Assembly: GCF_035594765.1 (NCBI RefSeq)
Contig: NW_026943823.1
Span: 14,322,001-14,386,000 of the forward strand
Source: Anolis carolinensis
Lineage: Eukaryota
Direction: 5' to 3'
Length of the DNA stretch: 64,000 nucleotides
In this document: positions 24,501 to 54,002 of the stretch, piece after piece
Numbering within the stretch: the first letter of the stretch is position 1
Layout of the letters: each line of letters opens with the position of its first letter
The notes under the pieces: model-generated
What the model saw: the letters and a program-made list of their open reading frames with translations, nothing else
The model's database searches: none
Told to the model about the DNA's origin: nothing
Translations under genes and position numbers: made by a program

Positions 24501-24554
24501 TTTTAAAGCTGTCCTCTGGACCTCCAACTCAGTTCAGCTGGCCTGGCCCCAATC
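24501..24554 (-). promoter_or_regulatory. Gene 1 promoter module: CCAAT box + E-box + TATA-like
   Basis: GATTGGGGCC-aggc-CAGCTG ... TTTAAAA on the coding strand. Confidence 0.6.
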
Positions 24555-26364
24555 CATCTTTGCCTCTTGTTCAAAGGGGTTTGTCCTTACCTTCTTCCCT
24601 TGAGGCTGAGAAAGTGTAACCTACCCAATATCTAGAACTGAGTGGGATTCAAACTCATGGAAATAATTCAAACTGATCTCCCAGAGAGATATAGTCCAAT
24701 GCTCAAACCACAACACCACACTGGAATTTACTCAACGGTTAGCTGAGGTTGATGACGATTTACTCGGTGATGCCCGGAGAAGCTACTTTCGGAGATGCTG
24801 AGGGTTGCAACCCCCAAAAGTAAGGTTTTCCTCAACTTGGTATAGAAGTGCCTCCAAAGTACATGACAATTCATTCCTTAGACTCAGGAAGTATCTATCT
24901 ACATTGAAGAATGAATGCAGTTTGACACCACCTCAACTCCCTTGGCTTAATGCTCTAGCATCCGGGGACTTGTAGTTTTACAAAGCCTTTTGCCTTCTCT
25001 GCCAAAGAGTGCTGGTGCAACAAACAACAAATCCGAGAACTGCAAAGCATTGAGCCACAGCAGCTAAAGTGGCGTTGAATTTCATTAATTCCCCAGTGTA
25101 GATGCACCCCCTGCTTTCCTGCATGCTGTCTTCTCCAGTGAGTTGTTTGCTTCTGGGTTTTACAGGATGCGGAGAATGAGTTAATGCTCTCCGAGGAGGC
25201 TTTTAATCAGACCTATTGACTAGTCTTGTAATGATTTCCTCTGGGTTGCCCACAGAATCATCTCTTCTGTAAGCCAGCTCAGCAATTAAGTTGACAGAGG
25301 TCTCCTTTAACAGCTCTGCGGAAAAAGAAAACGTGGAGCTGGGCACAACATTGTGTACTTTGGTACATAACGCTCTGTCCAGTTCACAGATCTGTTAAAG
25401 TCTCGTTCCCAACAAGATTTAGGATGGAGCTGTTTTGAGGTTTTTGCCCCTTAAATAAAGTGGCAAGCTTTGCTCAAACCAGTCTTTGCCAGCCTGAAAA
25501 AGTTACTTCTCGAAACTGACATCTTACAAAGCCCTTTAGCCCCAAATAGGCAGGAAGTTGTAGTTTTACAAGGCTTTTATAGCAGCCTCTGGCTATCAAA
25601 TTATACCTTACCAAACTACAACTTCCAGGATGCCATTGCACTGAGCTATGACAGTTAAAGTGATGTCAAACTGCACTTATTCTACAGTGAAGCTGCACCC
25701 TAAGGCCAGGTTTGAATCCCTGCTCATGCCTTGGGGGACTTTGGGAGAGTCACTCTCTCTCAGCCTCAGAGGAAAGCCTTCAATCTCCTTTGTGAAAGGC
25801 ATATACAGTAGAGTCCTGCTTATCCAACGTTCTGTATTACTACGTTCTGTATTATCCGATGCAGTCTGCCTTTTAGTAGTCAATGTTTTTGTAGTCATTT
25901 TTTTCAATACATTGCAATGTTTTGGTATTAAATTCGTAAATATGGTAATTGCTACATAATGTTACCATGTATTGAACTGCTTTTTCTGTCTATTGGTTGT
26001 AAAACATGATGTTTTGGTGCTTAATTTGGCTCGAAACTTCCCCTGTTGTAATGGTCATATGGTTTTAATTGTTTTAATTTGATTTGGATATTGGCTTTTT
26101 TTTGTGTTTTATGTTTGGTTTTTACTACATGTTGTATTGTATGTGGCATTTAATTCTGCCATTGTGTAAGACTGTTCTGGGGGCCCCGGGGGAAAAGAGC
26201 AGTATATTAAACAAACAAACAAACAAATAAATAAAATAATTTGTAAAGTCATAATGTAATTTGGTATTTAATAGGCTTTTCCTTAATCCTTCCTTATTAT
26301 CCAACATTTTTGCTTATCCAACATTCTGCTGGCCCGTTTATGTTGTATAAGGGATACTCTAGTC

Positions 26365-26683
26365 AGGTAAAGGTTTTCCCCTGACGTTAAGTCCAGTCGT
26401 GACCGACTCTGAGGGTTGGTGCTCTTCTCCATTTCTAAGCTGAAGAGCCGGTGTTGTCTGTAGACACCTCCAAGGTCATGTGGCCGGCATGACTGCATGG
26501 AGCGCCCTTACCTTCCTGCTGGAGCGGTACCTATTGATCTACTCACATTTGCATGTTTTCGAACTGCTAGGTTGGCAGGAGCTGGGGCTAACAGCAGGCG
26601 CTCATTCCGTTCCCGGGATTTGAATCTGGGACCTTTTGGTCCACAAGTTCAGGAGCTCAGCGCTTTAACACACTGTGCCACCA
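26365..26683 (-). mobile_element. Sauria SINE
   Basis: same family consensus. Confidence 0.82.
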
Positions 26684-26704
26684 GTGAATTAAAATTCACA
26701 GAAA

Positions 26705-27373
26705 TTTCTTCCACATGTGGTGGGGTTGCAAAATAGCAAAGGAATATTGGAAAAAATACACAAATCAATACAAAAAATCTTCAAAACAAACTTTCAACTG
26801 AAACCTGAGTATTTTCTATTAGGAATGACTGATATGAACTTTAATAAGAACCAAGAGATTCTATTCAACTATTTTATAACAGCTGCCAGAATAGTTTATG
26901 CAAAGAAATGGAAATCAACAGAATTACCAACTAAAGAAGAATGGATATTAAAGATTATGGACATAAAGAACATGGATATTCTGACATATTATTTGAAAAC
27001 CCATCAGGGTAAACCAGTTAAAAAAACGGACTGGACATTACTGATAACTTACATAGAACAAGAGGAACTTTTTATAAACACACAAGGACGGAGTGGACAT
27101 ATGAACAGTAATTGATACAAAATACTTTTATTTCACCTGGAAGGAAAGACGGGAAGGACAATCCCTTTTTTTTCTCTATTTTATCTTATTTTTAAATTTT
27201 TAACTCTTTTTTTTCTTACTTCCTTTTGATTTTTCTCTCTCTTTTCCCCCCCCTCTCCCTCTTTTTTTTACACATATCACATCCTCCCCTTTCACTTTCT
27301 TTTCTATATATTATTATTGTTCTCACACTTTTTATGTTTAAAAACACTCAATAAAAATTAAATTTAAAAAAAA
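26705..27373 (+). mobile_element. L1 LINE 3' fragment
   Basis: FFHMWWGC / ITAARIVYAKKWK ORF2 C-terminus, pyrimidine-rich 3' UTR, AATAAA-polyA, TSD tcacagaaa. Confidence 0.82.
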
Positions 27374-27600
27374 TCACAGAAAAATACATGAGTAATGAAT
27401 CATCCTCCAGTGCACAGTGATTCCAATGGGACCCAGGTGAGGCTTCCCTGTCAATACAGGTGTATGGGCTCATGAATCTAAAGAACAAGTGGCCAGGAAG
27501 GAGTGAGATGGACTTCTAAGTAGGTGCAGGACCTATATGGTTTGCACTTAGGGAGTGGAAACAACAACCAGGACTCCAATGGAGGAGTAAAGAGGGTGAG

Positions 27601-52096: not shown

Positions 52097-53141
52097 GTAG
52101 CCTACAACACAGAGAAACGTAAAAAAAAAAGAAAGTATGGTATATAGTATGTAAGTACTGTAGGTGATGTAATATTATCTTCTATATAAACAACTTTTAG
52201 TGGCACTTGTTATACAAGCTGCAAACGAAGAGAATTATGGTGTCGTATTTAACATCAGTATCAACTGGGTTTGGCTAGAAACAGTGGTAGATCATAGCCC
52301 CGTCCCTATGGAATCTCTTATGTTTAGTAGTAGTATATATTGCAATGAATCTAACAATATCTTTAGGGTTAGATGAATAGGTCTAACCCTAAAGATATTG
52401 TTAGATGACTGGTATCCAGGAGCTACTCTAAGAAGAACTTATACAGATGTTATATTAATTACTGAACTATCTTTTTCCACGCTCCAGCAACACTTGAGAA
52501 CACTATCAAGAGGGCAGTAGATTCTGCTTATTTTTCATTTACTCGATTTGACAAGATTGATATCAAACTAGAGACTACAACAGCTTTATGTTAAGGCTTA
52601 TGTGAAGGGTTGCCTTATCTGCATGTTAAGAACTGTTTATTTGACTCGATTCAATACTGAGACAGCAATTTTTATTGTTCTCAAGTCAACTATAAGACTT
52701 TGTTTTGGTTTTTATGGTTGACAATATTGGCACTTAAACCATTGATAGGAATAGTTTTTCCACAATACCTTTACAAGTGTTGCTAAATGTATTCCTTTGT
52801 GTTAAAGAACTACACTAATGTAGTGGATGAGAATACAAATAGTGGATACCTTGAGTAAAGTATTCATTGCAATATATACTACTACTAAACATAAGAGATT
52901 CCATAGGGACGGGGCTATGATCTACCACTGTTTCTAGCCAAATCCAGTTTATACTGATGTTAAATACGACACCATAATTCTCTTCGTTTGCAGCTTGTAT
53001 AACAAGTACCACTAAAAGTTGTTTATATAGAAGATAATATTACATCACCTACAGTACTTACATACTATATACCATACTTTCCTTTTTTTACGTTTTTCTG
53101 TAGATTATAGACACCTGCGTTTTTGAGTAGCCTACAACACA
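52097..53141. repeat. Fold-back insertion: ~240-bp inverted arms, 25-bp hairpin, 15-bp flanking direct repeat
   Basis: arms ~52110-52350 / 52862-53101; gtagcctacaacaca on both sides. Confidence 0.85.
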
Positions 53142-53361
53142 CCAAAACAAACTCCAAGAAATGCTGGGGAAAAACAGCTTCTGTTGGCTCATTATTATTA
53201 CTTCTACCAAATGCCCAAAGCATATGGATAGAGGTATCATTCTGAAGAGGCAGTAGGGAGACAAAAAGGAGAAAGGGCCCAGAGAAATAAATGAAAACAG
53301 TAGATACATCCAAGGTAACAGATTCACTTCATAGAAAGGCACTTGGCACCGAGACTCTTAC

Positions 53362-53842
53362 CTGGTAGGTCTTCCTCCATAGATGGGGTGGTCAACACCA
53401 AGTCCATGGTGGAGTTGGCTTGGGTGGTCCATCCTGTCTGGGTAGTCTCTTCCACTTGGGTGGTCTGTCCTATTTGGTTGGCCTGGGTTACTCCCACCAC
53501 CCCTCTGGCTTGGGCACCTCTCTCTCCTTGAGCTTTCCTCAGGCCTTGGTTGCCCACTAGGCTTCTGGTGGCCACCTTTCGCTGTTCACTGCCCACACAC
53601 TGCTTCTGGTCCAGGCGGAACTCCTTGGAGGAGCAGCAGTAGGGAGCAGCGCAAGTCCCACAGCAAAACCTGGCATCCGCTTCATCATTTTGGTCGGGAC
53701 ACTGGAAAGTGAAGACAGTGGCAGAAGAGGCACCTGCCCCATAGGACCAGAAGCGGCATATGTCGCCTGCTATTTCGGCTTCTCCAAGCTGTCCAGCTGG
53801 AGCAAAGATGAGCAAAAGGCTCCACCAGAGAGTTTTCCCCAT
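53362..53842 (-). CDS. Shisa-like cluster gene 5, exon 1 (signal + Shisa domain + Thr/Gln stalk)
   Basis: MGKTLWWSLLLIFAPAG; DIC..FQCP..ARFCCGTCAAPYCC..RLDQKQC; donor G|GTAAGA, phase 1. Confidence 0.9.
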
Positions 53843-53948
53843 AGCAAATTTCTCAGGCAATAGAGCTACCCCAGTGCCTTTCCCCTCCTTTCCCCCCACC
53901 CCCTCTAAAGGAGCCCCCAGGCAAAAGGGCGAGGGCCACCAGACCGGC

Positions 53949-54002
53949 TTTTATAGCTCAACAGTGCTTTCTTTCGCCTTGATGAGGCACCTGGCCTCAA
54001 TC
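53949..54002 (-). promoter_or_regulatory. Gene 5 promoter module
   Basis: GATTGAGGC-CAGGTG ... TATAAAA. Confidence 0.6.

What the first reader, a model, noticed from the sequence alone, without database searches (positions are those of the whole stretch)
24501..54002. Same CCAAT-like/E-box/TATA promoter cassette in front of all five cluster genes
Seen on each coding strand: GATTGGGGCC-aggc-CAGCTG..TTTAAAA (g1); GATTGGGCTC-atg-CAGCTG..GATAAAA (g2); GATTGGGGCC-tcac-CAGCTG..AATAAAA (g3); GATTGGGGCC-acagc-CAGGTG..TTTATAAA (g4); GATTGAGGC-CAGGTG..TATAAAA (g5). The promoter is more recognisably conserved than the proteins, which is independent evidence of common origin and of selection for co-expression. 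Inference (speculative): an E-box + CCAAT pairing recalls oocyte-specific promoters (FIGLA-type bHLH + NF-Y/Y-box), so the array might be germ-cell or egg-surface expressed.
Basis: partly seen in the sequence, partly recalled or inferred. Interest (0 to 1): 0.78.

Follow-up and report, generated by a model that had tools for sequence, protein, structure and literature searches.

The report
Ancient shared promoter of lizard Shisa-like genes
Five neighbouring green-anole genes for small Shisa-derived membrane proteins keep one short promoter that also fronts their relatives in six other squamates, so it has outlasted most of the protein sequence; its first box is not a true CCAAT box, and the tissue it drives could not be tested.

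Summary
All five quoted strings are present, on the coding strand, 96-202 bp before the five start codons. A composite pattern (box A, E-box, TATA) matches exactly five times in the 64 kb, only at those places.

The window is Anolis carolinensis. The genes are five two-exon paralogs with a phase-1 intron just before the transmembrane segment. g1 (LOC100555748) and g5 (LOC103280382) carry Shisa_N. g2-g4 do not.

The same cassette stands before about 20 further cluster genes in Phrynosoma, Pogona, Rhineura, Hemicordylus, Lerista and Liasis. It also flagged four unannotated gene starts. Consensus: G-GATYRGGGCC, a register of 14 bp to CAGCTG in 15 sites, then TATAAAG(G/C)C 30-66 bp on.

The "common origin and selection" reading is therefore strongly supported. 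The "CCAAT/NF-Y" reading is not. Outside Anolis the box is mostly GATCGG. The Anolis T fits CpG decay, and g5 has no CCAAT at all.

Verdict: a real, old, family-specific proximal promoter with an unassigned 11-mer next to an E-box. It is a new member of a known kind and of moderate interest. Other first-stage notes of this scan cover the same stretch (s1-519616, s1-519730).

The parts
24501..24555 (-). g1 promoter cassette: box A GGATTGGGGCC (24555-24545), E-box CAGCTG (24540-24535), box C GAGTTG, TATA-like TTTAAAA (24507-24501)
   Evidence: Nhmmer profile from other species E 5e-6. Alignable with the Phrynosoma ortholog from 24564 onward.
27600..27660 (+). g2 promoter cassette, divergent: GGATTGGGCTC, 3-nt spacer, CAGCTG (27614-27619), GATAAAA (27654-27660)
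   Evidence: Not recovered by the cross-species profile.
38362..38436 (-). g3 promoter cassette: GGATTGGGGCC, CAGCTG (38421-38416), CACTTG, AATAAAAGCCC (38368-38362)
   Evidence: The Phrynosoma g3 ortholog keeps the E-box and AATAAAAGCCCC.
46159..46225 (-). g4 promoter cassette: GGATTGGGGCC, 5-nt spacer, CAGGTG (46209-46204), CAGTTG, TTTATAAAGCC (46166-46159)
   Evidence: A Pogona ortholog with the cassette lies at L011:16620.
53949..54003 (-). g5 promoter cassette, divergent: AGATTGAGGC directly abutting CAGGTG (53993-53988), box D CCTCATCAAGG, TATAAAAGCC (53955-53949)
   Evidence: Box D is shared with Pogona and Rhineura genes.
22395..24376 (-). g1 = LOC100555748, 254 aa, Shisa_N; exon 1 24376-23983, exon 2 22765-22395, phase-1 intron
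27697..30554 (+). g2, 212 aa gene call, no Shisa_N; exon 1 27697-27835, exon 2 30055-30554, phase-1 intron
35348..38310 (-). g3, no Shisa_N; exon 1 38310-38067, exon 2 35670-35348, phase-1 intron (my model)
   Evidence: Phrynosoma ortholog exons found.
43080..46022 (-). g4, no Shisa_N; exon 1 46022 to 45872 (GTACCT donor, homologous to the Pogona donor) or to 45836; exon 2 43501-43080. Absent from the gene calls of L002.
50311..53842 (-). g5 = LOC103280382, 433 aa, Shisa_N plus PPPY tail; exon 1 53842-53362, exon 2 51131-50311, phase-1 intron

Best explanation
The cassette is the inherited proximal and core promoter of a squamate tandem family of Shisa-derived single-pass membrane protein genes. 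It was present before the family duplicated. Purifying selection has kept it in each copy since before the sampled squamate lineages split, while the ectodomains diverged or were lost.

Its anatomy, 5' to 3':
- Box A, an 11-mer G-GATYRGGGCC with no assigned factor.
- An E-box, C-CAGCTG-AG (CAGGTG in g4 and g5). Its start lies 14 bp after the GAT of box A in 15 of about 25 cassettes.
- A weaker GAGTTG or CAGTTG box.
- CCTCATCAAGG in some genes.
- A TATA box in the context TATAAAG(G/C)C, 30-66 bp after the E-box.
- A conserved TTTGGCTACTAG-like stretch 18-45 bp after the TATA, in about half of the cassettes.
- The ATG, 83-229 bp after the E-box.

Shown here: the elements, their order, spacing and orientation, and their conservation across seven species. 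Inferred: transcription starts about 30 bp after the TATA box; a bHLH dimer on the E-box and a second factor on box A, held in register, give the family a common, probably tissue-restricted, expression.

The GATTGG spelling that looked like an inverted CCAAT is an Anolis-lineage CpG-to-TpG variant of GATCGG. That position tolerates either pyrimidine.
For: Identity of the locus:
- Anolis carolinensis; g1 and g5 equal annotated proteins.
- All five genes share a two-exon, phase-1 structure.

Cross-species conservation:
- The cassette stands before genes in Phrynosoma, Pogona, Rhineura, Hemicordylus, Liasis and, partly, Lerista.
- Profiles built without Anolis hit only cassettes in 249 kb.

Predictive power:
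- Cassettes at L011:4477 and L011:16620 (Pogona), and at L003:612 and L003:5957 (Phrynosoma), are each followed by an unannotated signal-peptide exon.
- These include the g4 and g3 orthologs.

Age:
- The duplications predate the species splits. g1, g3, g4 and g5 have separate orthologs.

Constraint:
- In Anolis g1 against its Phrynosoma ortholog, collinear homology begins 10 bp before box A.
- Box A plus E-box match at 27/31, the TATA flank at 81%, and the coding sequence at 60-68%.
- The intron and the upstream DNA are unalignable.

Two information peaks with an uninformative spacer of conserved length.

CpG decay:
- CpG observed/expected is 0.10-0.34 in Anolis promoters and mostly 0.5-1.0 elsewhere.
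Against: - There are no transcript data.
- No factor is identified for box A.
- g2 and g5 have altered spacing, and the cross-species profile does not detect them.
- Both Lerista copies lack a CANNTG at the E-box position (CCACTGG, CCCTCTGG), and one Hemicordylus copy has CAGTTG. The E-box is therefore not indispensable everywhere.
- Phrynosoma g3 and Liasis genes have a degenerate box A.
- g4 is absent from the gene calls and has a weak GTACCT donor.
Confidence: 0.8

Rival explanations
1. An inverted CCAAT box bound by NF-Y (or a Y-box protein) paired with an E-box bound by FIGLA makes this an oocyte- or germ-cell-specific promoter, and the array encodes egg-surface proteins.
For: - Four Anolis copies do contain ATTGG.
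- The E-box lies within 200 bp of the putative start, as in Zp1-3 promoters (PMC1906760).
- Fast-evolving ectodomains are typical of reproductive proteins. This last point is inference.
Against: - g5 has ATTGA.
- Eleven of the 13 non-Anolis standard sites have GATCG or GATCA.
- No cassette fits RRCCAATSR better than random DNA.
- NF-Y needs the full pentanucleotide and is selective for the flanks (PMC6843132).
- CAGCTG and CAGGTG are bound by many bHLH classes, so the E-box does not point to FIGLA.
- There are no expression data.
Confidence: 0.07
2. The similarity is kept by gene conversion (concerted evolution) among neighbouring copies rather than by selection on function.
For: Some states are species-wide. 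All five Anolis copies have T at box A position 4, all seven Pogona copies have C, and both Lerista copies lack the E-box.
Against: - Flanks follow orthology, not species. GGCAAAG before box A is shared by Anolis g1 and Phrynosoma g1 but not by Anolis paralogs.
- The block is only about 40-80 bp, with no extended identity between paralogs.
- The motif is shared across lineages that split long ago, which conversion within one genome cannot explain.
- The Anolis T is explained by general CpG loss.
Confidence: 0.05
3. The conserved block is not a bHLH-driven promoter element. It is the site of one long-footprint zinc-finger protein (CTCF-like, as at the protocadherin CSE) that mediates looping or promoter choice within the cluster.
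For: - There is a register of 14 bp between box A and the E-box in 15 sites, and conservation spans about 24 bp.
- CCAGCTGAGGCCAG resembles the CTCF core with 2 mismatches in three copies.
- The Pcdh precedent is PMC3333863.
Against:
- The 3-nt spacer carries almost no information, which fits two separate sites better.
- A TATA box follows at promoter distance.
Confidence: 0.06
4. Chance or compositional artefact: short common motifs (GATTGG, CANNTG, A/T-rich runs) that happen to lie before five ORFs.
For: The single elements are common in the window: 32 GATTGG, 106 CAGSTG and 192 TATA-like strings.
Against: - The composite occurs only 5 times, all correctly placed and oriented.
- Shuffles and random-set controls never reach it.
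- It is recovered independently from other species.
Confidence: 0.01

Closest known systems
Family-wide promoter elements of tandem gene clusters, such as the conserved sequence element (CSE) before each clustered protocadherin variable exon (PMC3333863)
   Same: One short conserved element, in the same orientation and at a similar distance, stands before every member of a tandem array. It is kept across species while the coding parts vary.
   Different: The sequence differs, and it does not fit the CTCF core well. A TATA box follows. The genes are separate two-exon units, not alternative first exons. Nothing is known here about promoter choice.
CCAAT box / NF-Y proximal promoter element
   Same: Box A lies 47-67 bp before the TATA box, about where CCAAT boxes sit. 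Four Anolis copies spell ATTGG.
   Different: The pentanucleotide is absent in g5 and in most other squamates (GATCGG). The flanks are unfavourable. NF-Y requires CCAAT (PMC6843132).
E-box (CANNTG) promoters driven by bHLH factors, including FIGLA-dependent Zp1-3 promoters (PMC1906760)
   Same: CAGCTG or CAGGTG is present in all five Anolis copies and in most other cassettes, within 200 bp of the presumed start.
   Different: The partner element (box A) and its 14-bp register are not features of the Zp promoters as far as I know. The tissue is unknown. The Lerista copies lack the E-box.
Shisa / Shisa-like single-pass adaptor proteins (Pfam PF13908; Pei and Grishin 2012, as cited in PMC10531659)
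   Same: g1 and g5 have the Shisa_N cysteine pattern, one transmembrane segment and a proline-rich tail. g5 has PPPY motifs.
   Different: g2-g4 have no Shisa_N. The nearest relatives are squamate cluster genes variously auto-named shisa-1, -2, -3, -5 or -8-like. No clear one-to-one match to Shisa1-9 was established.

Membership tests
NF-Y CCAAT box | Intact CCAAT pentanucleotide | tested here: not met
   Present in Anolis g1-g4 only. g5 has TCAAT. Eleven of the 13 non-Anolis standard sites read CCGATC or CTGATC on the other strand. The requirement is taken from PMC6843132.
NF-Y CCAAT box | Favourable flanks (RRCCAATSR, consensus from memory) | tested here: not met
   The Anolis sites read GGCCCCAATCC. 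Best matches in the cassettes have at least 2 mismatches, no better than random 70-mers.
E-box (bHLH site) | CANNTG at a conserved position | tested here: met
   CAGCTG or CAGGTG is present in all 5 Anolis copies and in most other cassettes. Exceptions are two Lerista copies. Information content is about 2 bits per column.
TATA-box core promoter | TATAAA-like box at a fixed short distance before the transcription start | tested here: inconclusive
   A TATA-like box lies 30-66 bp after the E-box and 43-176 bp before the ATG in nearly all copies, in the conserved context TATAAAG(G/C)C.
FIGLA-dependent oocyte promoter | Oocyte-restricted expression dependent on FIGLA | not testable with these tools
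   No reads were obtainable. No paper mentions the loci.
Family-wide conserved promoter module of a tandem cluster | The same element, orientation and distance before each paralog | tested here: met
   Five of five Anolis genes, including the inverted g2. Seven cassettes in about 45 kb of Pogona.
Family-wide conserved promoter module of a tandem cluster | Conservation between species beyond neutral DNA | tested here: met
Family-wide conserved promoter module of a tandem cluster | Common trans-acting factor and co-regulation | not testable with these tools
   Needs expression and binding data.
Shisa family (PF13908 Shisa_N) | Shisa_N cysteine-rich domain above Pfam's cut-off | tested here: met
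   Met for g1 (40.7 bits) and g5 (43.9 bits) against a cut-off of 22. Not met for the g2, g3 and g4 exon-2 ORFs scanned, and their first exons show no cysteine pattern.
CTCF site (as in the Pcdh CSE) | Match to the CTCF core CCASYAGRKGGCRS (from memory) | tested here: not met
   Two to five mismatches, mean 3.7 against 4.85 in random DNA. The mismatches fall at core positions.

The most novel reading that the evidence does not exclude
Box A (GGATYRGGGCC), whose GAT lies 14 bp before CAGCTG, is an undescribed composite cis-element. A bHLH dimer together with an unidentified, possibly squamate-restricted, partner reads it. It defines a co-regulated battery of fast-evolving Shisa-derived membrane adaptors across Squamata. 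It can be used as a sequence tag to find every member, including those whose proteins are no longer recognisable.
Probability: 0.3. Interest if true: 0.6.

Novelty: new member of a known kind. Interest (0 to 1): 0.45.

Why it matters
It is a clean natural example of a promoter outliving its coding sequence. Three of the five anole genes have lost the domain that names the family, yet they keep the promoter, the intron phase and the position in the array.

The cassette works as a gene finder. It located four unannotated cluster genes in Pogona and Phrynosoma.

It also offers a compact, testable cis-regulatory module of about 100 bp, bounded on the 5' side by a SINE in g1. That makes it a good starting point for finding the regulator and the tissue of an uncharacterised squamate gene family.

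Finally, it shows how CpG decay can make a look-alike of a textbook motif (CCAAT). That is a caution for motif-based inference.

Tried and rejected
Start sites, tissue and co-expression are therefore untested.
- Literature: no paper in the library mentions LOC100555748, LOC103280382, LOC110074277 or LOC110074271. The search "shisa + squamate" gave nothing relevant.
- MAFFT of the five upstream regions misplaced g5. I replaced it with anchored views.
- The word-based protein search found only the anole proteins themselves. The exhaustive phmmer search was needed to reach relatives.
- One look-up (P0004) returned no contig.
- The hare shisa-1-like locus L009 shows no cassette within 320 bp of its annotated ATG or anywhere in 27 kb. 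Its first coding exon may not be its first exon, so this is weak evidence.
- NF-Y, CTCF, NFI, AP-2, GATA, Myb, TCF/LEF and NR5A readings of the boxes were considered by eye or by regex. None fits the conserved columns, and none is claimed (for NF-Y and CTCF; the rest rest on memory only).
- Spliced proteins of g2-g4 were not assembled. These genes were searched exon by exon, by reference or as separate exon translations in scripts. For g1 and g5 the database proteins P0001 and P0002 were used.
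Full report
**1. Observation**

The two-box pattern GATTGRG...CAGSTG has 4 matches against 0.09 expected, with 0 of 100 shuffles reaching 4. The fifth, g5, lacks the spacer. That pattern was written from the sites themselves, so I added three less circular tests:
- A three-box composite (box A, E-box, TATA-like) matches exactly five times on both strands of the 64 kb, and only at the five gene 5' ends. The single elements are common: 32 GATTGG, 106 CAGSTG and 192 TATA-like strings.
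- A search for the best shared block in the 250 bp before each ATG, with no motif supplied, returns GATTGGGGCC. It scores 37/40, against a control mean of 32.1 and a maximum of 35 in 200 random sets.
- A profile built only from other species finds Anolis g1, g3 and g4 as the three top hits in the window (E 5e-6, 1.6e-4, 2.3e-4; the next hit is 2.7).

g2 and g5 are divergent variants, and that profile misses them.

**2. What the genes are**

The window is Anolis carolinensis, assembly GCA_035594765.1, record JAWQEF010000012.1.

All five genes have two coding exons, with a phase-1 intron just before the transmembrane segment.
- g1 equals LOC100555748 (254 aa) and g5 equals LOC103280382 (433 aa). 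Both carry Pfam Shisa_N.
- g2 matches a 212-aa gene call.
- g3 and g4 are my own models. g4 is not among the gene calls of L002. It does have an intact ortholog in Pogona, with a homologous phase-1 donor and a conserved C-terminus.
- Among the exon peptides, only the Shisa exons of g1 and g5 are significantly alike (E 5e-15). Every other pair is at noise level.
- At DNA level the promoter block is one of the few collinear similarities between the loci.

They were searched exon by exon.

**3. Relatives elsewhere**

The word-based search found only the anole proteins. An exhaustive phmmer search with P0001 found 64 relatives. The nearest are squamate proteins with assorted automatic names (shisa-1, -2, -3, -5 or -8-like, or uncharacterised) from Phrynosoma, Pogona, Rhineura, Hemicordylus, Lerista, Liasis and others, plus a hare and rabbit protein.

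I fetched their loci. The same cassette stands before almost every cluster gene:

| Species | Cassettes | Note |
|---|---|---|
| Phrynosoma | 3 | box A degenerate in the g3 ortholog |
| Pogona | 7 | all within about 45 kb |
| Rhineura | 3 | |
| Hemicordylus | 3 | one copy has CAGTTG |
| Liasis | 2 | box A degenerate |
| Lerista | 2 | box A and TATA kept, no CANNTG |

A profile of 13 non-Anolis sites, run over 249 kb of window plus loci, hits only cassettes. It hits nothing in the hare locus.

The cassette also predicted genes. Sites at L011:4477 and L011:16620 (Pogona), and at L003:612 and L003:5957 (Phrynosoma), are each followed, about 175-215 bp after the cassette, by an unannotated ATG with a signal-peptide-like exon.
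- One is a Shisa_N exon.
- One is the ortholog of Anolis g4 (MDRVLLCALAP against MDRILLSTLAP; exon 2 at E 1e-24).
- One is the ortholog of g3.

g1, g3, g4 and g5 each have their own ortholog in another iguanian. The duplications, and the promoter, therefore predate those splits. From general knowledge of squamate phylogeny that is on the order of 150-200 million years. I did not compute this figure.

**4. Anatomy**

In 15 sites the start of the E-box lies exactly 14 bp after the GAT of box A. Their information profile has two sharp peaks, G-GATYRGGGCC and C-CAGCTG-aG. These are separated by three nearly uninformative bases and followed by a weaker gAGTT box.

Other features:
- A CCTCATCAAGG-like box lies between the E-box and the TATA box in a subset, including Anolis g5.
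- The TATA box sits 30-66 bp after the E-box, in the context TATAAAG(G/C)C.
- The ATG follows 83-229 bp after the E-box.
- A TTTGGCTACTAG-like stretch lies about 18-45 bp after the TATA in about half of the cassettes, and a GGACGGGGAGGG-like stretch a little further on in some. This is where a TATA-directed start would be expected. That last point is inference.

In Anolis g1 against its Phrynosoma ortholog:
- Collinear homology begins 10 bp before box A, at window position 24564.
- A SINE-like repeat abuts it at 24567-24718.
- Box A plus E-box match at 27 of 31 positions, the TATA flank at 81%, and TTTGGCTACTAG at 14 of 14.
- The coding sequence is 60-68% identical.
- The intron and the upstream DNA do not align.

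That is the signature of a compact promoter under constraint.

**5. The CCAAT reading**

Outside Anolis, box A is mostly GATCGG or GATCAG (11 of the 13 standard non-Anolis sites). On the other strand this reads CCGATC or CTGATC, not CCAAT. Anolis g5 reads GATTGA.

No cassette fits an extended NF-Y consensus better than random DNA (the consensus is from memory). For mammalian NF-Y the pentanucleotide is "an almost absolute must" and the flanks matter (PMC6843132).

The Anolis promoters are CpG-depleted. Observed/expected is 0.10-0.34, the same as bulk DNA in the window. The Pogona, Rhineura, Hemicordylus and Lerista promoters mostly show 0.5-1.0.

The simplest account is that GATCGG decayed to GATTGG by CpG-to-TpG transition, at a position that tolerates either pyrimidine. 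The inverted CCAAT is then a by-product. Selection for a new NF-Y site in Anolis cannot be excluded, but the flanks argue against it.

**6. The E-box and the oocyte idea**

The E-box is the best conserved element after box A. However, CAGCTG and CAGGTG are bound by many bHLH classes (general knowledge).

[quoted passage not shown] That criterion is met trivially here and discriminates nothing.

Tissue, start sites and co-expression remain open. I put the oocyte reading at under 10%.

**7. Rivals**

- Gene conversion is unlikely. Flanks follow orthology rather than species, and paralog identity is confined to 40-80 bp.
- A CTCF-like long-footprint factor, as at the protocadherin CSE (PMC3333863), is not supported by the core match or by the uninformative spacer. 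Only binding data could exclude it.
- Chance is excluded.

**8. Verdict**

This is a real, ancient, family-specific proximal promoter. It has an unassigned 11-mer held in register with an E-box, and a TATA box downstream.

The kind of thing is known: tandem families that keep a common promoter element. This instance, its depth in Squamata and box A itself appear undescribed in the library searched. I rate it a new member of a known kind, with an interest of about 0.45.

Other first-stage notes of this scan cover the same stretch (s1-519616, s1-519730).

Noticed in passing
window 60196-64000 (-): A BTB/BACK/Kelch (KLHL-type) gene, 635-aa call, runs off the window end next to g5. Another first-stage note calls it KLHL22. 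I did not verify the name.
   Followed up: no
window 24567-24718: A SINE-like repeat ends about 12 bp before box A of g1. Copies of it occur in the Phrynosoma locus (L003:9082-9226 and 10837-10974). It marks the 5' limit of the conserved g1 promoter.
   Followed up: partly
L011:4477-4941, L011:16620-18121, L003:612-2525, L003:5957-6530: Four cluster genes not present in the gene calls of the Pogona and Phrynosoma assemblies. Each has the cassette and a signal-peptide-like first exon. They include the orthologs of Anolis g4 and g3.
   Followed up: partly
L008:~900 and L008:~9834 (Lerista): Both skink copies keep box A (one degenerate) and the TATA region, but read CCACTGG or CCCTCTGG where the others have CCAGCTG. 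The E-box is lost in both paralogs of one species.
   Followed up: no
window 30260-30554 (+): Exon 2 of g2 ends in about three tandem copies of a repeat of roughly 30 aa (GQEAPG.PKAPVEKRGDQPG.DSEVTLE.EDA).
   Followed up: no
window 41187-41990 (-): A retroelement ORF fragment with a long AAT (poly-Asn) run lies between g3 and g4.
   Followed up: no
window 19831 (+) and 57241 (-): Two copies of a repeat containing GGGCCCTCCAGGTGTTTTGGACTTCA lie in inverted orientation on either side of the cluster. This is probably a common interspersed element.
   Followed up: no
window 45871 (g4 exon 1 donor): The donor homologous to the Pogona GTATGT is GTACCT in Anolis, a weak site, and g4 is missing from the gene calls. 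An alternative phase-1 donor, GTTAGT, lies at 45835.
   Followed up: partly
L009 (Lepus europaeus shisa-1-like, P0014): A lagomorph relative of the squamate cluster proteins exists (also in rabbit). No cassette was detected in its 27-kb locus.
   Followed up: partly
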